DNA of 64,000 bases. Source: Paramoeba atlantica. Taxonomy: Eukaryota; Protista; Discosea. The notes beneath the pieces were generated by a model. It saw only the letters and a list, made by a program, of their open reading frames with translations, was not told where the DNA came from and did no database searches. Positions within the stretch are counted from its first letter, which is position 1. Each line of letters opens with the position of its first letter. Shown piece by piece: positions 638 to 60,774 of the stretch. Location of the stretch: positions 494,533-558,532 of the forward strand of contig CDRNVI010000015.1 in the NCBI GenBank assembly GCA_977017575.1, written 5' to 3'. Made by a program: the position numbers and the translations under genes.

Positions 638-1075
638 GATGCCTATAAAAATACATCACCGATTGCGCACGTCTAAAATCGAAGGCATTGCAGATTCTTA
701 GAAAACTTGTTTCGAAGACGTGGCTAAATAAGTGGGGCGGATTTGTTGTACAAGGATTATTTCAAAGCTAGTAGAGGTACTTTGAATAAATAAGTAGATG
801 ACCTTTAAAGTTACGTTTTCTTAAACTTTGTAAAGTAATTTGTACCCCGGCTGCACATGACTTACAGTCAGCAAAACAAATTGATTTTTTTCTTTTGTAT
901 ACAGCTATTGAATAAATAGCACGGTTGCGCTGGTAATGTGTGCTAGTAGTGTAGGCTATTAGTATAGGCATGAGTGTCAATGCTCAGCATAGAGTGTCAA
1001 TGCAAAACAAGACGTAAGTAGAAGCGAACAGAGACCGCCCAGAAGCAAAATGACAGGTGAGCCACGTCAAATCTA

Positions 1076-1318
1076 CCGGTCGAGCAAAACATTTGGCATT
1101 TTTTTAATTTCGTCCTTCGAGATCAAAAAAACGTCAGATCAATATTTATGTGGACCAAAATTATTGGGGAAAAATTTTTCGTGCATTGAAATTCCACCCC
1201 CTAGCGCTCACAACGTATGGGATTCCGGGCCCTGAGAAAAATAAAGTCAGACCAATATTTATGTGGAACAAATTTTTTGGAGCCAAATAAAAGTGGACTA
1301 AATTTTCTGCTCGACCGG
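1076..1318. mobile_element. 243-bp TA-flanked MITE
   Basis: TA(1074-75) CCGGTCGAGCAAAACATTT ... AAATTTTCTGCTCGACCGG TA(1319-20); TIR 17/19 identical; flanks reconstruct TCTAGA; internal 35-bp direct repeat at 1133-1167 and 1246-1280. Confidence 0.75.
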
Positions 1319-1691
1319 TAGAGGAAGAAATGGAACCCAGGATGAAAGGGGCAAGGGATATACGTAGTAACAGGCGTGGCAGGTTCCCATTGAAAAGAAA
1401 TGGCATCTCCCCGCACGAATTTCGTCTCCGAGCTAGCAAGCGCAAAGGCTGTTCTCGTGCGGGGAGATACCATTTCTTTTCAGTGGGAATCTGCCACGCC
1501 TGTTGCTTCGTATCTCCCTCGCCCCTTTCAGCCTCGGTTATGATTATTTACATGTATTATTATTCTATATCTACGAGAATTCCGAGTAGACATTACTAGT
1601 ATTCCAAAGTTCTAATCTTGAATGCAAAGATAAATGTTGTTCTCTTCGGTCTAAAATGATGTTATGACAGCGCACTTCGATTTCCGAATAC

Positions 1692-2993
1692 ATGGCATAT
1701 TTTCCTTCTGTCACTCTGCATTCTACTCTTTTTGTTGCAATCGTTGCGTCCTTCATCCTTTTCCAAAGTCACTATCGAATATCCAGTCTTGAATTTTTGG
1801 TAAATAAGTTACCCTTGCGCCTAGCACGCGGCAGATTACCTTCAAAATTGAGCACTTTATCACGCCGAAAACCTATACGCGCGCTTGTAGTCCTTGGATC
1901 TGGCGGTCACACAACCGAAATGCTATACACTTTGCCAAATATCAAAAGCATGCTTTCTTTTTCTTATGTAATCGCGAGTAATGATAAGGGCAGCATATGG
2001 GCTCTCAAAGATTTCTCAAGTAGAGCACGGAAACAGGCAACTAACATTTGCCTGCCAAAAAATTCGTCACGCAAAACACATAACCCATTGAACAGTGCAA
2101 TGGTCTATCGCGTGCCTCGTGCTAGAAGCGTTCGTCAAAGCTATTTTACATCTATTTTTTCTTTTTTACATTGTCTTATTGTTTCTGTCTTTATCTTGTT
2201 TCACTTCCAACCTGATATCCTCCTTACTAACGGTCCAGGTACGTGCGTTCCGATTGCGTTGGCCACGTTCTTTCTTCGTCCTTGGATTTCATGTAAAATT
2301 GTATATATGGAAAGCTTTGCTTGCGTGCGTTCTCTTTCGCTCTCTGGTAGGCTTCTATACAAATTTTGTGACCTATTCCTCGTTCGCTGGAAAAGCATTG
2401 CTAAGATTTATCCGAAAAGCACATACGTACCATCCGAAGGAGCAATTTCAGGTTATTTAATAGACCAAAACATGCTTCCTATTCGTGGGACAGGATTATC
2501 AGCTGATCCATATGTTTTGATTACCGTAGGATCCACTTGTTTTAACGAGTTGGTTAAAGCATGCGATGATCCCTGGTTTGTGAAATGTATGCATGAGAAA
2601 TATTGTATTAACAAAATTTTTATGCAGATTGGAACCGGTTCTTATATTCCTCAACATCCAGACATAGTGCATTTTCGCTTCCAGTCTACCGGATTTGCAG
2701 TATCACTCGCCAAAGCCACTCTCGTGATTGGACACGCAGGGGCCGGCACTATATTAGATACACTTCAAGGTGCTACACCCATGATTATTGTTCCAAACGA
2801 AAGCCTCATGAATGATCACCAAACCCAGCTTTCTCAGGAACTGAGTGAAAGAGGTATTCTCCAAACACTTCGAATGCCCGAATTGAAATCAAAGCTTCCT
2901 ATGTTACAGATTAAAAAATCTGAGACTGGATTTGTGGCGGGCGCTTACGGGGAATATTTATCGTCGCATCTCGCCTTATTGAGTAAACCGTAA
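1692..2993 (+). CDS. ALG14-ALG13: Fused ALG14-ALG13 UDP-GlcNAc transferase (GT28/MurG-like; second step of dolichol-linked oligosaccharide synthesis)
   Basis: N-terminal TM segment; ALG14 motifs VVLGSGGHTTEML, TNGPGTC, YMESFA, SLSGRLLY; ALG13 motifs LITVGST, MQIG, VIGHAGAGTIL, VPNESLMNDHQ. Confidence 0.92.
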   Translation: MAYFPSVTLHSTLFVAIVASFILFQSHYRISSLEFLVNKLPLRLARGRLPSKLSTLSRRKPIRALVVLGSGGHTTEMLYTLPNIKSMLSFSYVIASNDKGSIWALKDFSSRARKQATNICLPKNSSRKTHNPLNSAMVYRVPRARSVRQSYFTSIFSFLHCLIVSVFILFHFQPDILLTNGPGTCVPIALATFFLRPWISCKIVYMESFACVRSLSLSGRLLYKFCDLFLVRWKSIAKIYPKSTYVPSEGAISGYLIDQNMLPIRGTGLSADPYVLITVGSTCFNELVKACDDPWFVKCMHEKYCINKIFMQIGTGSYIPQHPDIVHFRFQSTGFAVSLAKATLVIGHAGAGTILDTLQGATPMIIVPNESLMNDHQTQLSQELSERGILQTLRMPELKSKLPMLQIKKSETGFVAGAYGEYLSSHLALLSKP

Positions 2994-24369: not shown

Positions 24370-25303
24370 ACATCTAAGCGGTTGTTTGTCTTTATATAAA
24401 TTTTGTATACACGGTATTTCAGTGTACGCCACTACTTATTTGTACCTGTGCCATTTCTGTTCTGTATTTTAGCACGACTTCCTTTTACGAGGCCAGGTTG
24501 TGTATAATACGTACCTATTGAATTACAGAAAAGCTTGCAAAGGCGCTACACTTTGTTCCATCGTGTGTCATTTACGAGATAAAAAATAATTTTTATCTTT
24601 TCTGCATTTCGTGAGTACCTTTATTCTCAGAAAAGTCAAAGAACGGCTTTTTTGCGTTTTGACTTGGCGCTGCACGTAGGTGATTCCTGAGATCTCAATA
24701 TCTCATTCATACGGATATTCAGTTACGCTAACATAGTTGCACTTATGTGCTGTCTCCCGAAAGATTAAAAAACTAACGATTCAGCCAACTCTGTGCACTC
24801 CTCATTTAAGAGGCAATCGCCTCTTCGCATCTACACATGCCTAGCGCTTTCCGATTCCGTTATTCTTTTTACATTACATACATGGGATACTTCATATTAT
24901 ACATGGGACACTTCCCATAGCGAGAGGCAGTAACTTCTTCCCGTGGAAGAACCGAAGCAATTGTTTCACTGGTCTTGTGATGCTTACTCCCTCTTTTGCA
25001 AACATAATGTGCCCCCCCTTTAATGGAGACTCCACCCCTCAGACCCCCCTTTAATAGAGACAAAAACTTGGAATAATTTTGGAGAAAAAAATGTATGTTG
25101 CTTAAAAGGGTAGAAAAATACTTAGAATTCACTGAACATTCAATAATCTCTAATAATGTAAACATTCACCGCATTCAAGGTTTCTGAATCCGCGGAATCT
25201 CCTGTCAAGTTGAAAGATGGTGTTCGTAACACGATTCATTTTGTGCACGGGCCTCTGAGCTCCTGGATTATCACAGAACCGCCAGCCACGAATCCGGAAT
25301 CTA

Positions 25304-25615
25304 CCGTATACCCCCCCCCAGTAAGAGAATGGGTTTTGGGTCGAAATGGCCAAATCTCTCTTACTGGGGGGGGGTATGCTTTTTTGGTCAGTTTCCTCTT
25401 TTCTCCCAACTTTTGACTATTTTTTCTTTTTTTTCTTCTGAAAACGTGTTAAAACGCTTCTTTGGGGTACCCTCGAGGCCCCTAACATGCAGACACTCAC
25501 CCCCTATACGCCTCCTATTGAGCTCCCAAGCCAAATCTCTCTTACTGGGGGTCAGCCTAAAAAGGTTCAAATCTCCCTTACTGTGGGGGGTACCTTACTG
25601 GGGGGGGGTATACGG
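25304..25615. mobile_element. 312-bp TA-flanked MITE with CCGTA ends (Tc2/pogo-like termini)
   Basis: TA CCGTATACCCCCCCCCAGTAAG ... CTTACTGGGGGGGGGTATACGG TA, a perfect 22-bp TIR; internal copies of AAATCTCTCTTACTGGGGG. Confidence 0.85.
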
Positions 25616-25849
25616 TAACATTCGAAATCACAAACAACCTTCTTCCAATCACTGTCCGTGAAAAGAGAGACCGAACAGAGTAAAGCATGTATGACAAGCG
25701 CGATATATGCCTGTCGAAATCGACGGTATCCAATATACAGGATAAGTACGGGCTCTCTCCAAGTACTTTTCATAAAACACGCAACTGGTGAGTGACATTT
25801 TTCTGTTTTAGTCTCTTCGTTGTTCTCAACTTAGGATGTACCACTGCTG

Positions 25850-33097: not shown

Positions 33098-33184
33098 TAA
33101 ACGCGGAGGTAGTTTTCAACGCGAAGCGCGCAGCATGAGTGACTTCCAAGTTGAAAACAACCGCCGCATTTAACGAAGCCACTA
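33098..33184. mobile_element. Left-truncated, diverged copy of the palindromic mini-MITE at 34910-35004
   Basis: Same 29-bp core GCGAAGCGCGCAGCATGAGTGACTTC; about 5 substitutions; right end ...CGAAGCCAC TA retained. Confidence 0.85.
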
Positions 33185-34800: not shown

Positions 34801-34909
34801 AATGGTAGGTCGGAAGGCGCGTATTGTGCGCGTTTAATAATTTTTCGCCAAAAAATCGAGCTATTTTACCCGACAAAATACATTATTCATGATGTTTTGG
34901 CAATTTTTA

Positions 34910-35004
34910 GTGGCTTCGTTAAACGCGGTGGTAGTTTTCAACGCGAAGCGCGCAGCATGAGTGACTTCTAAGTTGAAAACGACCACCGCGTTTAACGAAG
35001 CCAC
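34910..35004. mobile_element. 95-bp palindromic mini-MITE flanked by TA
   Basis: 39-bp arms at 34904-34942 and 34972-35010 with one mismatch, around a 29-bp spacer; TA at 34908-09 and 35005-06. Confidence 0.85.
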
Positions 35005-35060
35005 TAAAAAAATACAATAGGGGAAACAATTATGAAAAATCATTTTTTTGCAAAATATAT

Positions 35061-35276
35061 CCGAAAAATTCCGAACTTGGCGGACCCGTCCTGAGGATGC
35101 GCGGGGGGCTCACCCCCAGGTATGGGGGTGGAAAATGAGCGCCAAGACCCCGGCTACTCTTTCTGGGGGTTTATTTTGAAAAATATTGTTTTCGAAAAAA
35201 TTTCGTGCGGTATGCCCCCCCATGGACCCCCCCCATGGACCCCCGATTTTGTTTCAATTTTGGACCACCGGAGCCC
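35061..35276 (+). repeat. Dispersed repeat family X, copy A, 5' part
   Basis: Aligns by eye with 47737-47980 (CCGAACTTG.CGG.CCCGTCCTG, GCGCCAAGACCCCGGCTAC, TTCGTGCGGTATGCCCCCC, TTTTGGACCACCGGAGCCC). Confidence 0.85.
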
Positions 35277-35490
35277 CTTTTTACTTTTTTTCTTCGGCGC
35301 GGAAAATGTTTTGGTCCTTTTCTGCTAATTTTCTAATATTCCTATACCTCGTTATATTCCTATACCCTCTTAATATTCCTACCAGGAATACAACCGTATT
35401 AACCCGGACAGTGGTTTAATTCGGTCTACTTTACCTACATGCAATCATCCTAGCGGCCGAGCCAATGAACCTTCTCAAAAAATGTCAAAA

Positions 35491-35580: not shown

Positions 35581-35596
35581 GCATACTCTCCTATTA

Positions 35597-36139
35597 AACC
35601 CCTGGCCAAAATAAGGCACCCCCCTCCAAAATCTCAATGCTTCGCTTGTTTGAGCTAATTTTGGTAGCATTTTATAGATCTCAATGCAAAGAGTTTGCGC
35701 GTTAAGAAACGGAACAAAAAATACAAAATGCATACATTTGAAAGTCTGATTACTACATTTTCACCCTTAAAAATTTCAAAAAAAATTACGCCCTTTTAAA
35801 CGAAAAAGTCTTCCCCCCTCTGAGAAATTCAGTTTTTTTCATGTGTTTTCGCTCATTTTTGTTGCAAACGAGAGATCACGCTTCCCTCACGAAGATGATT
35901 GCTGCCCTTTTTTCATCGGGAGACCCCTCGTGCCCCTTGATCGCAAAATTGCGCATTCCTGGAAAACAGAAGTGGAACATCAAGTTTTTTATATATTTTT
36001 TGTTCCAAGGTTTTGGTCGACTAAAAATAGCGGGAACGTACAGATTTCAAAAATCTGAACGAAAATATGGTATCATAACCCTACCATGCTCCCTCGTGCA
36101 AAAGATATGGGGGGGGTGCCTTACTGATGGCCAGGGGTT
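35597..36139. mobile_element. 543-bp TA-flanked MITE nested in repeat X copy A
   Basis: TA AACCCCTGGCC-AAAA-TAAGGCACCCCCC ... GGGGGGTGCCTTA-CTGAT-GGCCAGGGGTT TA (TA at 35595-96 and 36140-41). Confidence 0.78.
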
Positions 36140-36141
36140 TA

Positions 36142-47282: not shown

Positions 47283-47736
47283 AGAATTAGTCCACGTTCG
47301 TTGACAGTCGGATTTACTGTCAACGAAGTGGCAGCCAATTGGTTGACCCGTCAACGAAGTAGAGACGTACCCGATTTTTGCGTATATTTGCTCTCAGAGC
47401 ACTAAATTCGACGTTTGCGTGTGGGAAATCACTCGTACGCATGAATTCAAGGCTACAGAACGTATTGGGTAGAGAATGCGACTCCAACCATACCATTCTT
47501 CCGACCCAAAAAGACCCCTTGGGGTCCAAAAATTACGTTTTCCCATTTTTTGGTCAAAAATGGGTCATTTTGGGAGGCGTACCACGGCTTCAAGAAGCGA
47601 CATCTCGCGAAGACAATGTCGTAGAAAGCTAGAATACGTCCCAAACTATCAAAATACAATAGTCGGAACAATTTTGGAAGAATATTTTTTTTACCATTTT
47701 TTTCGTCAAGTTGAAAATTTTTTCTAAACAAAATTT

Positions 47737-48123
47737 CCGAAAAAATCCGAACTTGACGGGCCCGTCCTGCGCATACGAGGTTGGGTCACCCCCGGGTAAT
47801 GTGGTGGAAAATGCGCGCCAAGACCCCGGCTACCCCTTCTGCGCTTTTTATTTTCGAAAAATATTTTTTTCGAAAAACATTCGTGCGGTATGCCCCCCCC
47901 TGGACCACGCCGCCCTGGACCCCCCCTGGACCCCCCAAGGGTCCGATTTTTTTTTGAAAATTTTTGGACCACCGGAGCCCATTTTGTATATTTTTCTTCT
48001 ATCATATTACTGTGTTCCTTTTTATATCTTCACTGTTTTTGTTCATTTTTTTTTCAATAATCGAGGGTAGAGCGGTAGACCAACCACCGCAATTTTAATT
48101 ACCTTTAATTGAAGTTTCTCCGG
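47737..48123 (+). repeat. Dispersed repeat family X, copy B (uninterrupted, about 390 bp)
   Basis: Contiguous match to 35061-35276 plus 36142-36260. Confidence 0.85.
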
Positions 48124-51104: not shown

Positions 51105-51485
51105 ACTACTGTCCATAAGTACTGTGACCCCCCACATTTGTGTGGACACAAATTGTATAGCGGGGTATCCCCCACTTAACCCCCAGGACACGATCAGTCA
51201 CCCCCTCCAGAATTTGGTTACTTTATCCGTTCGGGCTAATTTTTGTTGCGTTTCGCAGATCTCGATGACGCTTGTTTGCGCATACAGGCACCACCTCTGC
51301 TTTTGTCTTAAACAATTTGTGTACTAAAGCAATAAAAACGAGCAAAATATGAAGCTGTAAAGCTTAAACACTGCATTGCATTTTTTTTGCGATTGCATGG
51401 GGTCCTATTATATGGGATTATAGTATATAAACCCTATTACGCTTTTAAGCCTATTCCTGATTTCTTAATTGACATAAGATTATAC

Positions 51486-52190
51486 ATGGAGTTATACTTC
51501 AATTCTTGGTCGATGAATTTAGCTTTTATGGATGTTGGGGCGCGTCGCAAAGGCTCCAAAGTTCGTGGCACATCCTTACCCCAAGAATATGCTCTAGTCA
51601 AATTTCTGGCCAATGTGACTCACGACTCCGGCACCTGGTCAACGCATACACCAGCTTGCGCGTGGAATGGGATTTCGTGTGATGGGAAAGATCGCGTTGT
51701 CGAGATACGTATCGGGGGGGAAGGCTTGAGTGGAACCCTTGACGTGTCCTCGCTACCTGCGTCATTACTTTTGTTAAACACAGCCAGTAATAAATTATGT
51801 GGCTCCGTCGCTTTCTGTTCACTTCCCGGAGAACTCCAGCAGCTAATTCTCCGCTACAACTTTTTTACCGGGCTTGTCGATCTCACGAGACTTCCTTTCG
51901 GACTTCAGTCTCTCTCTTTGCAGTCCAATCGGTTCTCCGGGACGATTGATCTTGCATCGCTTCCCCCTACTTTACATTCTATTTATTTGGGATGCAACAA
52001 TCTTGACGGAGGGCTCGATCTCTCCTCTCTTCCGCGGACTCTTCGTGATCTCTATTTGAACGACAACAACTTCACTGGTTTGGTCGATTGTAGCCGATTG
52101 CCGACCTCATTAAAGACACTACAAATGTCACGCACGCAGATAAGATATGACCCACAACAATGTTCTGCTTTAATTCAGATTTATACATAA
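51486..52190 (+). CDS. Short leucine-rich-repeat protein, tandem paralog of 50478
   Basis: LPQEYALVKF...TWSTHTPACAWNGISC; about six LPxxLxxLxLxxNxFxGxxDL repeats. Confidence 0.88.
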   Translation: MELYFNSWSMNLAFMDVGARRKGSKVRGTSLPQEYALVKFLANVTHDSGTWSTHTPACAWNGISCDGKDRVVEIRIGGEGLSGTLDVSSLPASLLLLNTASNKLCGSVAFCSLPGELQQLILRYNFFTGLVDLTRLPFGLQSLSLQSNRFSGTIDLASLPPTLHSIYLGCNNLDGGLDLSSLPRTLRDLYLNDNNFTGLVDCSRLPTSLKTLQMSRTQIRYDPQQCSALIQIYT

Positions 52191-54542: not shown

Positions 54543-54850
54543 TCGCCTTGCAATACTCACTAACCCAAAACAATAGTGGCAGGTGGCAGTAAACAGGGGT
54601 ATAGGAATAAAACCAGGATGGTATGAGATGTGGGAAGAGGTGTTTGTCTCGGAGCCTGGTGTTCAGTACCGGTTCTAGAAAGCTGGAGCACGTCTGATTT
54701 CCTATAGAACAAACTTCCTATTTCATAAAATGAATTTCTAAACAGAATAGAAATGAAAAACCAACTGGGCAAAGGGAAAGTATGAGATACAAAGGAATAC
54801 AAAAATTAAAAACAATGACAGGACGAACATTGAGTTTTCAAGTATAAAAA

Positions 54851-54958
54851 TTACATGTGTAATGCATGTATGTAATACATGCATGTATTATTGTACATGC
54901 ATGTACATATTGTTACATGTACATTGTATGTTAATTACATGTGTAATGCATAATGTAC
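54851..54958. repeat. Self-complementary ACAT/ATGT low-complexity block
   Basis: ATTACATGTGTAAT twice, GCATGTAT-GTA-ATACATGC stem, TACATGTA at 54914. Confidence 0.75.
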
Positions 54959-55315
54959 GAACAGTATAGAAGACATTTAAAAGGGAGCATTGTTTGCATG
55001 ACAAGAAGAAAAACTTAAGCCCAGGTATAAAGTGTAGCCCGGGTGATTGTTAAGCACATTACGTGAAACTTTGAAAACCCCATAGAAACATACAGGGGGG
55101 TGCACAAAATATGGGAGGGGGTCAAAATTCGCGTAGGTTGGCCAATTTCGGAAAATACCGCATTCGAGAGCTCTCACAGACTTACGTGTCATGTGATACT
55201 GCGTTTTACGTTGTTTCCGGGTATGTGCATTTTCCCAAATACCGTAAAAACGGCAAATGCAAGTTTGATTTCTGACGAAAAAAATGTTAATATCCACAAT
55301 TTCCACCTTTTTTTG

Positions 55316-55501
55316 CTATATGTCAATTTGCGCGCGTGTCGGTACACTCTTTAATGTCATCAAAAAAACATTGTATAGCTTCCCTTTTAATTTTGGTCCA
55401 CATAATACCCAACACCTGGCAGTGTTCCCGTGAAACCCAAACTCCTTGGCGACAGCAGAAAAAGATTCCGTTTCTACAATTCCTTTTACCAAAAGTATCA
55501 T
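55316..55501 (-). pseudogene. Transposase N-terminal HTH remnant
   Basis: IVETESFSAVAKEFGFHGNTARCW resembles YEKTNSYSRTAQNFGVHEGTVKLW of the 57.5-kb transposase. Confidence 0.5.
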
Positions 55502-56177
55502 GTGAGAGGGTCAGAGTTGCCCATGTCATAATCTTCTTAATAAGAAGGGAGGGTTGGTCTTACAAAATGCTACCACACGCGAGAAGCTTGTATCTTGTAG
55601 TTCCTACAAAACTAATTACACTCTAGGGAGAAGAGTCTATAGAGGCGTACCTCGATGACATCACGTTTGGTCGGACGAATCTCTCACATTAGTCTACTTC
55701 AACGTGAATGGTGCGGATGGACGTGCATGTAAACGTGAATCTAGGAAATTGTTATTTTTGAGTTCACTCACCAGACATCATCCTCAAGAGGCACTCTAAT
55801 TTAGAGTTTATTCAAAACCATTTATTCAAACCCGATACTCTTAAAACTTAAACATATTTATAATCAAGGATCATATGACTCAGACTTTCGATGAATTGGA
55901 GATGTTTTCTTCGATGCTTCATTCGAGGAGCTCTGCCACCTCATGATTCCGAGATTTCTCATTATTAGCAAAAACGAATGACAACTTCTCGTTTTGTTCC
56001 CTTAACACCGTAGTTGTTTTGTATGAGATCATGTTAACCTCTCTTTTTGTATTTTTCATGTATGTCGTTTACGCCTACGGTACATTCGTACGTCACAGCT
56101 ATTTTATCATTTTTCTCAACCGTGCTCTCTAGATCTTTCTGAAAATTTTGCACCTCTTTTTTTCCTGTCACTTCTGG

Positions 56178-56750
56178 ATGAATTTTTATTCAAGAGAATT
56201 CTTTTACACCGGAAAATCTTCGGACTCCTTTGTTGTCACACGGCGTGGAAAGGCCTAAAACTTCCTCCTGAACTTGGTCTTATTTCTTTCACACAGAACA
56301 TTTCGAACCTTCATTCTTCATGTACATCTGAACGTCCTCCTTGTGAGTGGGAAGGTGTGTCATGCACAAGTTCCCATCACATCCACTCACTATCATGGGA
56401 TATGATGAATCTAATAGGTGAGCCTCTGTGGTCCTTTTTGCCAGATACTATAACCGATTTGTCTATGTGTGACAACAAGCTTGAGGGGGCATTGCCGTTG
56501 GAGTTATTTCCTCCTGGTCTTAAGATGTTGAACTTACACAGGAACAGGTTTAGGGATTCGCTTGACTTCAGCAAACTTCCACACCAAGTTTATACCGCGT
56601 GATTTAGTTTCAACTTATTCTCTGGGCCGCTAGATTTAAGTTTCATTTCTCATGCGCTTATATCACTCGACCTAAGCCACAATAGGTTTGATGGTACATT
56701 TCTTCAGTTCCTTCCACTCTTCAATCTTTGGACGTTAGCTCAAACTGTTT
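56178..56750 (+). pseudogene. LRR-family pseudogene inside the TIR-bounded element
   Basis: ATG 56178; frameshift near 56255; LPPELGLISF...PPCEWEGVSC cap; LRRs; in-frame TGA 56600-02 followed by FSFNLFSGPLDL..LISLDLSHNRFDG. Confidence 0.8.
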
Positions 56751-56898
56751 CAGCTCATTCAATCCGCATCTTCCTCCGGTATGGATCATAATACATAACC
56801 AGCATTCAGCAACCTAGCCTTTCTATACACCGCACGAACTTTGAATCGTCTTTAGCTTGTCATTATAGCTTAGTAGCTAATCTATAGTAGCTAATCTA

Positions 56899-57293
56899 CA
56901 GTGCGCCCAGTTGGTAAAGTCCCAAAAAACGGTTTTCCCAAATCGTAAAGTTTTTTGTTTTAGTTACCTTTTTTTAGAGTTTTTCTCTTTTTCGAATATT
57001 TTTGTCTAAAAGAAATCGTCAGTCTGTCATTGATTGCATTTCATCACCTTTTTTAAAGTTATGACAACGGACATTCGCATACAACTTGCGTTGCAAAGCG
57101 TTGTCCAAGACTCCAGCCCAACTGTATTTGATTTTGATATGCTTCATAGAAAATATTGATTCTTGTTTTTTGATTGTGCGCTTTCATTTTTTCTCTATAC
57201 TTCAACGACATTCGATTGCCCCGTTGATAAAGTCCCAAAAAACGGTTTTGACAATTCAGTAACACACAGGTACAGTGCGCCCAGATAGTAAAG
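56899..57293 (+). repeat. Three same-orientation copies of a Tc1-type terminal repeat (CAGTGCGCCCAG..GTAAAG)
   Basis: TA CAGTGCGCCCAGTTGGTAAAGTCCCAAAAAACGGTTTT (56897-936); GTTGATAAAGTCCCAAAAAACGGTTTT (57223-249); TA CAGTGCGCCCAGATAGTAAAG (57271-293). Confidence 0.8.
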
Positions 57294-57296
57294 ATT

Positions 57297-57779
57297 TCAC
57301 TCTAGCATTTCAGTGGCAAATTGTACTCTTCGTTCCTTGTGGTTCGTAGTTAAGAAAGGGACCTTCTTTACCGTCCTAAGAATAATTTTTTCTTTTGATT
57401 TTTTCAACATGTTCTTTAGGGAATTTAATGAACACGTGAAACCACGGCGCTTAACCTCTCTCCAAAGCTCGCTCCAATTAGCGATGCCATAAGTAAGGTC
57501 GCGATAAGCCTCGTCAATAATCTTTAAGGCCACTTCCTTGAGATCTGGTATACTGACCCTAGGAAAACGTTTAGGAGACGGACTGATCACGTCCCCAGTG
57601 GCGTTGTAACGCTCGACCCAGAGTTTAACAGTCCCCTCGTGGACCCCAAAATTTTGGGCTGTGCGAGAATATGAGTTCGTTTTCTCATAGTCCGCCACAA
57701 AAAGCATACTGTGGGTTTCCTTCGTCTTCCCTGGTGAAGAGTAGGACCGCGCGCTCAAATTTCGACCGGTCGTACGCAT
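57297..57779 (-). pseudogene. Tc1/mariner-family transposase, N-terminal DNA-binding half only
   Basis: HTH SYSRTAQNFGVHEGTVKLWVERYNATG; second HTH SELWREVKRRGFTCSLNSLKNML; linker VKKVPFLTTNHKERRVQFA; stops where W...SDE should follow and abuts a CAGTG TIR. Confidence 0.8.
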
Positions 57780-58157
57780 CGGAGTAACATTCGAGCCGTC
57801 GGACCCCCTCGCGTGGACGGTAGAGGACCCACAGCCTGTCAAGGCCAAAAAGGTGCTAAATAGAATAGAATAGAGTTTAGTCCCTTCCATGCAATCTCGG
57901 TTTCGCAGCTCCCACGCCAGTCGTCGTTACGATAGTTTATCTTGCGGGAAGACACCGCTTAACCGCCAGGATGATTTTCCAGGCGATGAGAGCTTTCTCT
58001 GAGGTAGACTTGCTTAAGAATCCTCTGCAGACAGCGGCGTCGTACTCCAGGCAGGTTATTGAACGGCATACATCTTCCTCAATGAACCTCAGCTAAGCAG
58101 CTCAGCCAGGTTCCCTGAGATGGAGTATGCCCCTCCTCTTACTTACTAAGTTAGTAC

Positions 58158-58239
58158 TGGTTCATGAACCATTTCATGAAAACAGTGGTTCATGAAGTGG
58201 TTCATGAAAGGGTTCATTGGTTCATTGGTTCATGAACCA
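58158..58239. repeat. GGTTCAT(GAA) array bracketed by perfect 14-bp palindromes TGGTTCATGAACCA
   Basis: Palindromes at 58158-71 and 58226-39; six GGTTCAT copies in total. Confidence 0.85.
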
Positions 58240-58786
58240 CCAAGGTATGTCAAAACGCCACGGGCAGTCCTTGAGCGAACACGCTTCTGGGGCATAAAAA
58301 AGGAAACAAATCAAAATTTGCCATGTTTTTGAACAAAAAAACATCTTTTTTTTCGTCGGATTGATTATCTATAGTTGAGCGACCCGAGTCTGGAAAAGAC
58401 ATACAACTTTGTGAGAGCTCTCGAATGCGCTATTATTTTCCAAAATCTAACAATCTTTACAAATTTCAGACCCCCCAGATCGAAGTTGACACCCCTGTAT
58501 GAGAAGATCTGAGTTGCCCACGAGGTGCATAACAGAATCTACTCCTTAATAAAATAACGGAATTCTTCACCTTATTTTTAGAACACGGCCTCTTCTGGGT
58601 CATAGTCTTACAGTAGGATCAAAAAGGTCCCTAAATCCATAAACAAAAGCAGTTTTTTTTGAAAAAGCAAATTGCTTTGGAATTCTCTAAAAACTTTGAA
58701 ACTCGGTTTTATTATCGATTAGCCTTATTTCCTTTCTAAGGATATTTCTAGAAGCATCACTTTCTATAAATAAGCACTCTTTGTTC

Positions 58787-60340
58787 ATGTTTTTTCATAC
58801 TTACATCCTTACAAAGCGTGGCCCTTTTGCGAAAATCTGGTTGGCAGCGCATTGGGATCGCAAACTCACGAAAAATGATGTCCGTATGATTAATTTGTCT
58901 GAGACCGTGTTAAACATCATTGAGCCCGCTGTTCCTATTGCTTTACGTACTTCAGGTGAGCTTATGCTCGGTGTAGTGCGCGTTTATGGTCACAAAGTGC
59001 GTGTCCTTCTAAAGGAAGCACAAGACGTTGCTCAAGATTTGCTACGCAGTCACAAAGATGCTCTTCTTGTTGGTGTCACTGCAGCTGGAGGGAAAACAGT
59101 TATTGCAAAGGAAGTATCCTCTGCCGTGACGAACATGGATCCTCCTCCGCTAGATTTTCTAGCCACTCCTTTAGGAACTTTTGAGGCCGATTTCGACGCC
59201 ATTTCTAACCTTGTGCTTCCAAACAAGGTTGATCACGGACTCCGTACAATTCCACGTGCGATCCAACAGCAAGACATCACAGACGACTGGTTTCAACCCC
59301 CTGCCTCACAGTTCCAAGAAAATCTCGAGGATTTCTCCCAAGAGCTGAAATTCCCCCTCGGCGAGGACTCACGTGGTCGAGAAGAATCCATCCCCCTCAG
59401 TGAGCATTCCAAAAAATCCGGCTCCGTTCCCTCCATCGAAGAACTCCGTAAATCCGCCACAGCCCCACGCACTGCCGAATTCGACCGCCTCAACATGGAT
59501 ATTGGTCTTCCCCTCCCCGACGAGGAACTTCCCGAGTTCCCTGTCCTCCCCACCACCCCACCCCCTGCCGGTACCGATCTTCTTCTCGACACCCACGACA
59601 ACCCCCGAGAGGACATCTGGGCCGAGCCCCTGGGATCCGCAAAGAAACTGAAACGTACCCTCGGGGCGCGGCTGAATGTCGTGGACAACCGCGACACGAT
59701 GCTCTCCTCCGAGAGTTACCGCAGTGCCATGCGGGACCGCTCGGAGTTACTGCTGCCGTACTACCGCCAGGGCCCGCACAGCCTCCAGGACACCCGTCGC
59801 GTGCAGCGGCTGGAGCAGCAGTCGCTGCACCAGTCCCTGACGCTGCTCGGGGGACTGGAGGAGTGGGCCCCGATGCAGGGGTGGTACGAGGCCGCGGTAG
59901 CGGAGGGGCATGGGGAGAGGGTGTTCCCGGTCGCGGAGACCGGGAGACGATCCGCTCGTGGGGGAGGGGAGGGGGAGGGTGTGGAGATGGAGATGGCGCC
60001 ACCGGTGCCGGAGTTTGATATGACGGGCATGGGGGTACCGGAGTTGGCGACGTTGGAGGAGCCCGCGGCACCTCCGACGGGATTGGGAGAGGATGCGGCG
60101 ACACCTCCACGCGTGAGTAAGCGGGTCCGGGAGGAGAGTAATCCGGAACTTACGTTGAGTTCGTTTAAGAAAGCATCTAATGTAAATGGGGTGATGGTGT
60201 TTCGTATGGCGATGTCGGGGAAGACACGGACACAGGTTGCGCGGAGCTTTGCGGATGCATTGGTGTTGGCTTCTCGTGGGGAAGTTACGATACGGCAAGA
60301 GAAGCCATACGGAGAAATGTACGTTACAACAGTGGCTTAG
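58787..60340 (+). CDS. SCC1: Cohesin kleisin subunit SCC1/RAD21
   Basis: MFF..YILTKRGPFAKIWLAAHW; IALRTSGELMLGVVRVY..KV..LL.EA; C-terminal WH RTQVARSFADALVL...I.QEKPYGEM; SxExxR sites at 59432-49 and 59705-22. Confidence 0.93.
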   Translation: MFFHTYILTKRGPFAKIWLAAHWDRKLTKNDVRMINLSETVLNIIEPAVPIALRTSGELMLGVVRVYGHKVRVLLKEAQDVAQDLLRSHKDALLVGVTAAGGKTVIAKEVSSAVTNMDPPPLDFLATPLGTFEADFDAISNLVLPNKVDHGLRTIPRAIQQQDITDDWFQPPASQFQENLEDFSQELKFPLGEDSRGREESIPLSEHSKKSGSVPSIEELRKSATAPRTAEFDRLNMDIGLPLPDEELPEFPVLPTTPPPAGTDLLLDTHDNPREDIWAEPLGSAKKLKRTLGARLNVVDNRDTMLSSESYRSAMRDRSELLLPYYRQGPHSLQDTRRVQRLEQQSLHQSLTLLGGLEEWAPMQGWYEAAVAEGHGERVFPVAETGRRSARGGGEGEGVEMEMAPPVPEFDMTGMGVPELATLEEPAAPPTGLGEDAATPPRVSKRVREESNPELTLSSFKKASNVNGVMVFRMAMSGKTRTQVARSFADALVLASRGEVTIRQEKPYGEMYVTTVA

Positions 60341-60774
60341 GTCGAGGTAGTACTACGGATTGTTTTCATCGATTCATGAAAAACGTGTTTATTAACGCTT
60401 TTTACTTCTCAGCTGACGAAGAACAAAGAATAAAATTTAATATGAAATGTTTGATTGATGTGTTGAAATGTTGGCTTTTTTTCGGCTCAAAAAAAATGCT
60501 CCTGATTGCATTGATTTACATGTAGGTAGAGGTTTCTTGTGTATACGACGCGATACGAGTTTTTCTTTGATAATTTGTTTCACTTTGTTTTAAAGCTGTT
60601 TCTATCTTTTTTTAGACGCTTAGAGTTGCTTTATATTACGCCGTCAGTCTTCGACAAAATACGTAAGTTTACTAAACTCCATTGGATTCTTTTATACCGC
60701 GAATCAGTGCCGCGCATTATATGTCTTTCCTTCTCCCTTTTTTTCAACCCTTTCATCCTTTTTTTACATAAATT

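What the first reader, a model, noticed from the sequence alone, without database searches (positions are those of the whole stretch)
57297..57779. Tc1/mariner-superfamily transposase in a kinetoplastid
Seen: 160 codons with paired HTH regions and the KKxPFLTxxHKxxRxxFA linker typical of Tc1/IS630 transposases, next to a TA-CAGTG end, plus five distinct TA-flanked MITE families in the same 64 kb. Known: trypanosomatids lack class II elements, and the only kinetoplastid DNA transposons I recall being reported are Merlin. Inferred: a diverse, apparently undescribed Tc1/mariner-MITE system, perhaps acquired from an amoeba host or retained ancestrally.
Basis: partly seen in the sequence, partly recalled or inferred. 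Interest (0 to 1): 0.8.

Follow-up and report, generated by a model that had tools for sequence, protein, structure and literature searches.

The report
Dead Tc1-like transposon in a kinetoplastid
This is a broken front half of a cut-and-paste jumping gene; complete, possibly still active copies of the same family sit elsewhere in this kinetoplastid-type genome, a group in which I found no published report of such transposons.

Summary
Window 57298-57776 (minus strand) encodes about 160 residues of the paired helix-turn-helix DNA-binding part of a Tc1/IS630-type transposase, including the KKVPFLTTNHKERRVQFA linker.

It is a dead piece:
- No catalytic DDE domain exists anywhere in the 64 kb.
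- Its true start (58295-58248) is cut off by a 495-bp foreign insert.
- Homology stops 13 residues before the first catalytic Asp.

The neighbouring TA-CAGTG end is not its end. The family's ends are TA|CAGGGG..., with inverted repeats of about 105 nt, and this copy's 5' end lies at 58396-58497.

Four compact copies (1.56-1.57 kb) on other contigs of the same assembly share these ends and TA flanks. Three carry intact 373-residue genes and one has a single stop. At least eight intact 373-residue proteins are on record. Their catalytic spacing is DD32E, not the DD34E of Tc1.

An exhaustive protein search found relatives above about 31% identity only in this assembly, so there is no sign of recent transfer, from an amoeba or otherwise.

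The host looks like a kinetoplastid: one-strand intronless gene array, and a spliced-leader-like tag on the SCC1 RNA. The literature I searched reports only Merlin DNA transposons in kinetoplastids.

This scan had already noted the same DD32E family on other DNA of this genome. Verdict: a real, ordinary relic of a notable, apparently unpublished family.

The parts
57298..57776 (-). Transposase-derived coding remnant. It matches residues about 9-167 of the intact 373-aa protein: both HTH motifs and the linker, ending 13 residues before the first catalytic Asp. It lies in the open 197-codon ORF 57297-57890.
   Evidence: tblastn and blastp give 74-75% identity to P0024/P0026 over 159 aa. Pfam hits HTH_23, HTH_28 and HTH_Tnp_Tc3_2. 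DNA is 79.7% identical to L001:6078-6539.
58248..58295 (-). Original first 16 codons of the transposase (MPQKRVRSRTARGVL.), now separated from the rest of the gene.
   Evidence: tblastn: 13/16 identical to P0004 residues 1-16 and 88% to P0003. It lies within DNA homology 58499-58250 to L001:5829-6082.
58396..58499 (-). 5' terminal inverted repeat of the element in transposase orientation (58396-58497), followed by the flanking TA (58498-58499).
   Evidence: It aligns with both arms of four other elements: 76-87% identity, invariant TA|CAGGGG terminus, conserved inner core GCGCATTCGAGAGCTCTC. Read depth is 7564 here against 45-92 in the flanks.
57755..58249 (.). 495-bp foreign insert splitting the transposase gene after codon about 16, with TCAAA on both sides. 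It supplies the false ATG and the first 38-44 codons of the 197-aa ORF and contains TGGTTCATGAA-type palindromic repeats.
   Evidence: The homology map has a gap here. A contig of run X4 joins 57754 to 58250 without it (table 5). Repeats are listed.
57271..57293 (+). TACAGTGCGCCCAGATAGTAAAG, a solitary copy of the terminus of a different repeat. It marks where the transposase homology breaks off.
   Evidence: Homology to all intact elements ends at 57298.
56897..57270 (+). 374-bp unit of the CAGTG-type repeat. An outer and an inner direct copy of GTAAAGTCCCAAAAAACGGTTTT lie 313 bp apart. No inverted partner exists in the window. Its nature is unresolved.
   Evidence: (D3, D7). Depth is 4-6 times that of the flanks, with many variant letters.
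56249..56695 (+). Leucine-rich-repeat gene remnant on the sense strand of the gene array, with one in-frame stop.
   Evidence: tblastn with the LRR protein of 51387-52190: 30% identity over 149 aa, E 3e-18. Pfam LRR_1 is weak.
55403..55522 (-). Second, more divergent fragment of the first HTH of a transposase of the same family.
   Evidence: tblastn: 44-47% identity to residues 28-63 of P0003, P0004 and P0005.
55091..55318 (-). Flanking TA (55091-55092), then a divergent 3' inverted repeat (55093-55190) plus subterminal sequence of an element of the same family.
   Evidence: Alignments. It is only 65-75% identical to every other arm and 71% to the arm at 58497.

Best explanation
Shown. The 160 codons are the front (DNA-binding) half of a dead copy of a cut-and-paste DNA transposon. 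It belongs to a Tc1/IS630-type family that is restricted, as far as public data show, to this genome. A complete element is 1.56-1.57 kb. It is flanked by TA and has terminal inverted repeats of about 105 nt that begin CAGGGG and hold a conserved core. It carries one intronless gene for a 373-residue transposase with two helix-turn-helix motifs and an RNase-H-type catalytic domain whose residues are spaced D..D-32-E. The window copy kept its 5' repeat, its first 16 codons and codons about 9-167. It was split by a 495-bp insertion and lost everything from just before the first catalytic Asp onward, at a junction with an unrelated CAGTG-type repeat. It cannot make an active enzyme. It lies antisense in a 4.6-kb repeat-filled gap of a one-strand gene array, upstream of SCC1.

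Inferred. The transposase binds the repeats, cuts the element out and reinserts it at a TA. The family is, or recently was, mobile. The divergent end at 55091-55318 and the second small HTH piece belong to another, older copy, not to this one.
For: Identity of the fragment:
- Pfam and NCBIfam hits.
- 74-75% identity to intact P0024/P0026.
- Colinear DNA homology to L001 and L005 from the terminus through the 5' UTR into the ORF.

Family anatomy:
- Four elements each read TA|CAGGGG...CCCCTG|TA, with arms 90-93% alike.
- The D, D and E residues are invariant in eight intact proteins.
- 32 residues separate the second D from E, against 34 in outside relatives.
- Sleeping Beauty catalytic domain, E 1.5e-13.
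- The AF2 model's best structural matches are Mos1, Sleeping Beauty and SETMAR.

Truncation:
- tblastn finds no DDE piece in the window.
- A run lacks the 495-bp insert in a joined form.

Selection history:
- dN/dS is 0.20 at dS 0.79 against the L005 copy, with no stop in 159 codons. The copy therefore diverged as a working subfamily and died recently.

Lineage:
- The ten proteins of this assembly form one clade (support 100/100) on a long stem.
- Exhaustive HMMER: the three distant hits at 34-36% identity whose source I looked up all lie on this assembly. The first named outside hits are arachnid Tc1-like proteins at 25-30% identity.

Host:
- All long ORFs lie on one strand.
- A GTTTCTGTAC... 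tag is joined at an AG just before SCC1 in an independent run.
Against: - No empty site or polymorphic insertion was seen, so mobility and the TA duplication are inferred from flanks only.
- No single read-derived record spans from the transposase piece to SCC1. Only overlapping short contigs tile it.
The canonical leader motif is recalled from memory.
- The Pfam hits of the window piece alone fall just under the curated cut-offs.
- Depth-based copy number is rough and may include other organisms in the samples.
Confidence: 0.85

Rival explanations
1. The whole stretch 55091-58499 is one 3.4-kb non-autonomous 'Pack-type' element. On this reading it captured a host LRR gene fragment between its two inverted repeats and could be moved by transposase supplied by the intact copies.
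For: - Both ends are family members in the correct mutual orientation, each next to TA.
- An LRR fragment lies between them.
- Another first-reader note reports a 6.5-kb TIR pair around an LRR gene elsewhere (untested).
Against: - The two arms are only 71% alike, against 90-93% in real elements. The left arm is about equally far from all subfamilies.
- A second HTH fragment of a different subfamily sits near the left arm, which points to two separate partial copies.
- The interior is single-copy by depth.
- The LRR piece is on the sense strand of an array that already has an LRR gene 4-5 kb upstream. A resident paralog hit by insertions is the simpler reading.
Confidence: 0.15
2. The transposase belongs to the element that ends in TA-CAGTGCGCCCAG. 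On this reading the ORF lies just inside that terminus.
For: The CAGTG terminus abuts the end of the ORF (57271-57293 against the stop at 57297), and CAGTG is a classic Tc1-type end.
Against: - All four complete relatives have CAGGGG ends.
- This copy's own CAGGGG end, 5' UTR and first codons are present and colinear at 58499-58248.
- The junction lies in mid-gene, where 206 more codons should follow.
- The CAGTG sequence has no inverted partner in the window and is absent from the other fetched loci.
Confidence: 0.04
3. The open 197-codon ORF is a domesticated or regulatory HTH-only protein that binds the family's repeats, for example as a damper of transposition.
For: 159 homologous codons are free of stops and frameshifts, and dN/dS is 0.20. 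DNA-binding-only derivatives can inhibit Tc1/mariner transposition; this is general knowledge and was not tested here.
Against: - The low dN/dS is explained by its history as an active subfamily.
- The start codon and first 38-44 residues come from a foreign insert.
- It is antisense to the gene array.
- It is single-copy, with no ortholog outside the assembly.
- An RNA-like run that covers both flanks has no contig on it or on the repeats.
Confidence: 0.05
4. The locus is a contaminant or an assembly chimera that joins foreign transposon DNA to kinetoplastid DNA.
For: The assembly record is filed as an ENA analysis with metagenome-style contig names. The repeats could mislead an assembler.
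Against: - Contigs of two DNA samples cross 54800-56930 and 58418-60437, and overlapping pieces tile the interior.
- An independent 2015 run of the same organism holds both flanks.
- Intact family members sit among eukaryotic housekeeping genes on other contigs.
Confidence: 0.03

Closest known systems
Tc1 family (DD34E) of the IS630-Tc1-mariner group, e.g. Tc1/Tcb2 and Sleeping Beauty
   Same: - Bipartite HTH DNA-binding region.
- HTH_Tnp_Tc3_2 plus DDE_3 domains.
- SPDLNPIENLW motif around the catalytic Glu.
- TA flanks, terminal inverted repeats, a single transposase gene and a size near 1.6 kb.
- Best sequence match among solved structures is the Sleeping Beauty catalytic domain (E 1.5e-13).
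- Nearest named proteins are arachnid Tcb2-like transposases.
   Different: - 32, not 34, residues lie between the second Asp and the Glu.
- Identity is only 25-31%.
- The family sits on a long isolated stem in the tree.
- It has an extra stretch between the first and second Asp.
- Its ends are CAGGGG, with 104-111-nt repeats holding a conserved palindrome-like core.
- The host is kinetoplastid-type.
mariner Mos1 (DD34D)
   Same: Mos1 is the best whole-length structural match of the predicted model (Foldseek E 1e-11). It shares the same two-domain plan and TA target.
   Different: The third catalytic residue is Glu, not Asp. Repeats are long rather than about 28 nt. Sequence similarity is marginal.
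Bacterial IS630 family
   Same: The NCBIfam IS630 model aligns over nearly its full length (E 4e-20). The TA target is shared.
   Different: The score of 72 bits is below the family cut-off of 100. The elements sit in eukaryotic chromosomal contigs among eukaryotic genes.
Merlin elements of Bodo saltans and Perkinsela (the only DNA transposons I found reported in kinetoplastids; PMC8101967)
   Same: A DDE-type cut-and-paste element in a non-trypanosomatid kinetoplastid.
   Different: Merlin is a different superfamily (DDE_Tnp_IS1595). It was described as a few old copies without recognisable repeats or target duplications. Here there are intact genes, clear repeats, TA flanks and many copies.

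Membership tests
IS630-Tc1-mariner superfamily | N-terminal bipartite (paired-like) helix-turn-helix DNA-binding region | tested here: met
   Window piece: HTH_23/HTH_28 at residues 67-107 and HTH_Tnp_Tc3_2 at 139-196. The model of the intact relative shows two three-helix bundles.
IS630-Tc1-mariner superfamily | RNase-H-fold catalytic domain with a D, D, E/D triad, in the window copy itself | tested here: not met
   No DDE-coding sequence lies in any frame downstream or anywhere else in the window. The copy ends 13 residues before the first Asp.
IS630-Tc1-mariner superfamily | Catalytic D, D, E triad and fold in intact members of the same family | tested here: met
   D180, D276 and E309 are invariant in 8 intact proteins. 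DDE_3 scores above its cut-off. They align to the Sleeping Beauty triad. Structural matches are Mos1, Sleeping Beauty and SETMAR.
IS630-Tc1-mariner superfamily | Terminal inverted repeats and a TA target-site duplication | tested here: met
   All 10 ends of 5 elements read TA next to CAGGGG. Arms are 90-93% alike in the four compact elements. No empty site was available, so the duplication itself is inferred.
Tc1 family sensu stricto (DD34E) | 34 residues between the second Asp and the Glu | tested here: not met
   32 residues in every subfamily. A two-residue gap appears against DD34E relatives in the alignment.
mariner family (DD34D) | Third catalytic residue is Asp | tested here: not met
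   Glu in the NPIENLW motif is invariant.
Bacterial IS630 (NCBIfam NF033545 equivalog) | Score at or above the curated cut-off of 100 bits | tested here: not met
   72.4 and 60.1 bits for the intact proteins and 29.3 for the window piece.
Pack-type or non-autonomous element (for 55091-58499 as one unit) | A matched pair of ends enclosing non-transposase cargo, moved as one unit (several copies or an empty site) | tested here: inconclusive
   The ends are in the correct orientation with TA, but only 71% alike. The interior is single-copy by depth. No empty site was available.
Merlin superfamily | DDE_Tnp_IS1595 domain | tested here: not met
   The Pfam scans of the window piece and of the intact proteins list no such domain.

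The most novel reading that the evidence does not exclude
The DD32E family is currently mobile in this kinetoplastid. It has several intact 373-residue genes, copies 97% alike, well-kept 105-nt repeats and ends at roughly hundred-fold depth. If so, it would be the first active cut-and-paste DNA transposon known in Kinetoplastea, resident and diversifying there for a long time. Dead copies such as this one, and many short derivatives, would be moved in trans within polycistronic gene arrays.
Probability: 0.5. Interest if true: 0.7.

Novelty: new member of a known kind. Interest (0 to 1): 0.5.

Why it matters
Kinetoplastid genomes are the textbook case of eukaryotes that carry retrotransposons but almost no DNA transposons. 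The papers I found report only a few old Merlin relics (PMC8101967) and none in 57 trypanosomatid genomes (PMC12278014).

A diversified Tc1-like lineage with intact genes and abundant ends would have three consequences:
- It would change the picture of the ancestral kinetoplastid mobilome.
- It would raise the question of how a transposase gets expressed in a genome without gene-specific promoters.
- It could provide a native transposon tool.

The window locus itself adds only a dated relic. It also shows how such elements pile up in a widened gap of a gene array.

Tried and rejected
- Rfam scan of the window: no hits.
- Atlas look-up of SCC1 to name the organism: only generic eukaryote clusters.
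- Literature search for the leader-like tag: nothing relevant.
- Inverted partner or other copies of the CAGTG-type repeat: none in the window, in the fetched loci or in the scan's notes.
- Sequence search of the fragment alone against solved structures: nothing significant for the N-terminal piece.
- The bacterial promoter/terminator scan does not apply to this organism, so I did not use it.
- Reading the in-frame TAG of the L001 copy as a recoded stop: rejected, because intact copies have Tyr there.
- Amoeba-host transfer: rejected for lack of any relative above about 31% identity outside the assembly.

Full report
**1. The observation**

The minus-strand ORF 57297-57890 (197 codons) is real.
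- Its residues 67-107 and 139-196 hit HTH_23/HTH_28 and HTH_Tnp_Tc3_2. The latter scores 31.0 bits against a cut-off of 31.5.
- The NCBIfam IS630 model gives E 6e-7.
- TACAGTGCGCCCAG follows the stop codon at 57271 and recurs at 56897.
- No frame downstream, and no place in the whole window, encodes a DDE domain.

**2. Relatives and family anatomy**

A word search with the fragment found one relative on another contig of the same ENA assembly (ERZ24900291). Wider searches found more.

At least eight intact 373-residue proteins are on record: P0024, P0026, P0004, P0011, P0015, P0016, P0017 and P0005. There are also dozens of fragments.

Four elements were read in full:

| Element (coordinates include the flanking TA on each side) |
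|---|
| L001:5829-7403 |
| L003:3772-5333 |
| L004:3760-5323 |
| L005:7790-9367 |

- Each is 1.56-1.57 kb between the TAs.
- Each reads TA|CAGGGG...CCCCTG|TA.
- Each has 104-111-nt inverted repeats that are 90-93% alike between arms and share a conserved core.
- The L001 copy has a single in-frame TAG where the intact copies have Tyr.

The proteins carry HTH_Tnp_Tc3_2 and DDE_3. They align to the catalytic domain of Sleeping Beauty (E 1.5e-13) with the three catalytic residues in register. They keep D180, D276 and E309 invariant.

An AlphaFold model of P0024 (mean pLDDT 80.8) matches Mos1, Sleeping Beauty and SETMAR best.

The second Asp and the Glu are 32 residues apart. The nearest outside relatives have 34. 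I found no use of 'DD32E' for this superfamily in the searchable literature.

**3. What the window copy is**

DNA and protein comparisons give this map, read on the minus strand:
- 58497-58396: the 5' repeat.
- 58295-58248: the original first 16 codons.
- 57755-58249: a 495-bp foreign insert bounded by TCAAA.
- 57776-57298: codons about 9-167.
- At 57298 the homology stops, against the 23-nt CAGTG-type sequence.

A contig of run X4 joins 57754 to 58250 directly. The form without the insert therefore exists as DNA somewhere in that sample.

The ATG of the 197-codon ORF and its first 38-44 codons belong to the insert.

Against the L005 copy, the 159 shared codons give dS 0.79, dN 0.16 and dN/dS 0.20, with no stop. 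I read this as a separate subfamily that evolved as a working gene and was broken recently.

**4. The wider 3.4-kb block**

Another first-reader note takes 55091-58499 as one Pack-type element.
- The left end (55091-55318) is indeed a family end in the matching orientation.
- However, it is only 71% identical to the right end and 65-75% identical to all other arms.
- A second, divergent HTH piece lies beside it at 55403-55522.
- The LRR piece at 56249-56695 is on the sense strand. It is 30% identical to the LRR gene at 51387-52190 of the same array.

I therefore favour two partial copies plus a CAGTG-type repeat that landed in or around a resident LRR paralog. The single-unit reading is not excluded.

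**5. Host and assembly**
- All ORFs of 250 codons or more lie on the plus strand. They are intronless eukaryotic housekeeping genes, including leishmanolysin.
- In a 2015 run of the same coded organism from a different study, a contig starts at 58751 with 16 unmatched letters, GTTTCTGTACCTTGTT. They stand directly after a pyrimidine tract and an AG.
- From my own knowledge, GTTTCTGTAC is the conserved part of the kinetoplastid and diplonemid spliced leader. SCC1 therefore appears to be trans-spliced there.
- That run holds both flanks but none of 55091-58750, not even the highly repeated ends. This fits RNA without detectable element transcripts.
- Contigs of two DNA samples cross both outer junctions (54800-56930 and 58418-60437), and overlapping pieces tile the interior.
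- Depth over the right repeat is about 80-170 times the flank depth. This is a rough sign of many copies.
- I could not name the species.

**6. Origin**
- In a maximum-likelihood tree, the ten proteins of this assembly form one clade (100/100) on a stem of 1.5 changes per site.
- The exhaustive HMMER search of 1.84 billion representatives gave 13 hits at E 1e-30 or better.
- I looked up the source of three of the more distant hits (34-36% identity). All three lie on this assembly.
- The first named outside hits are arachnid Tcb2-like proteins at 25-30% identity.
- There is thus no trace of a recent donor. The 34-97% spread of identity inside the genome suggests long residence and diversification.

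**7. Literature and earlier notes**
- Lopes et al. 2021 (PMC8101967) call Merlin the first DNA transposon in kinetoplastids.
- The Bodo saltans genome paper lists only retroelements and TATE (PMC4728078).
- A 2025 survey finds no class II elements in 57 trypanosomatids (PMC12278014).
- My searches found no report of Tc1/IS630-type elements in kinetoplastids.
- Within this scan, first readers had already noted DD32E Tc1-like elements with 107-108-nt repeats on other pieces of this genome, and follow-up agents had described a different twin-transposase Tc1 family.
- I derived the DD32E spacing and the repeats independently, before reading those notes.

**8. Verdict**

The family behind it is a genuine, apparently unpublished Tc1-like lineage in a kinetoplastid-type genome.

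Noticed in passing
window 57755-58249: A 495-bp insert inside the transposase gene, bounded by a 5-nt direct repeat (TCAAA). It has no inverted ends and carries a cluster of TGGTTCATGAA palindromic repeats at one end. An inner segment of about 110 bp (57764-57874) is repeated about 8-fold by depth. Its class is unknown.
   Followed up: partly
window 56897-57296: A CAGTG-type repeat with an outer and an inner direct copy of a motif of about 32 nt, 313 bp apart. This layout recalls the IR/DR arms of Tc3 and Sleeping Beauty. A third partial terminus follows. No inverted partner was found.
   Followed up: partly
window 58751 (run X5): A spliced-leader-like tag, GTTTCTGTACCTTGTT, is joined just after the AG at 58750-58751, 30 nt upstream of the SCC1 start codon region. 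It marks the trans-splice site of SCC1.
   Followed up: partly
window 1074-1320, 25302-25617, 33098-33184 and 34904-35010, 35595-36141: Further short TA-flanked inverted-repeat structures. One has perfect 24-nt ends, and another is a 107-bp hairpin element with two copies 94% alike. All are MITE-like and lie in the gaps between genes.
   Followed up: partly
window 35003-35295 and 47645-47999: A repeat of about 300 bp is present twice in direct orientation (77-89% identity) in two different intergenic gaps.
   Followed up: no
L003:573-2691: Two 336-residue Tc1-like transposase genes lie head to head in a mirror-image element. Its ends begin TA|GTGTAGGCATGAG, so it is a different family from the one studied here. 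It lies 1 kb from an intact DD32E element.
   Followed up: no
L005:7790-9367: An intact DD32E element sits in the sense orientation between LicD-like and CSE1-like genes of a one-strand gene array. The dead window copy is antisense. Orientation may matter for expression.
   Followed up: no
P0007 (386 aa) and P0019 (411 aa): Family members whose transposase reading frame runs on into unrelated sequence. P0007 has a weak DUF6570 hit. They could be fusions, or broken copies read through.
   Followed up: no
window 1692-2993: A single ORF combines an Alg14 domain with a Glyco_tran_28_C (Alg13-like) domain, a fused form of the two-subunit UDP-GlcNAc transferase.
   Followed up: no
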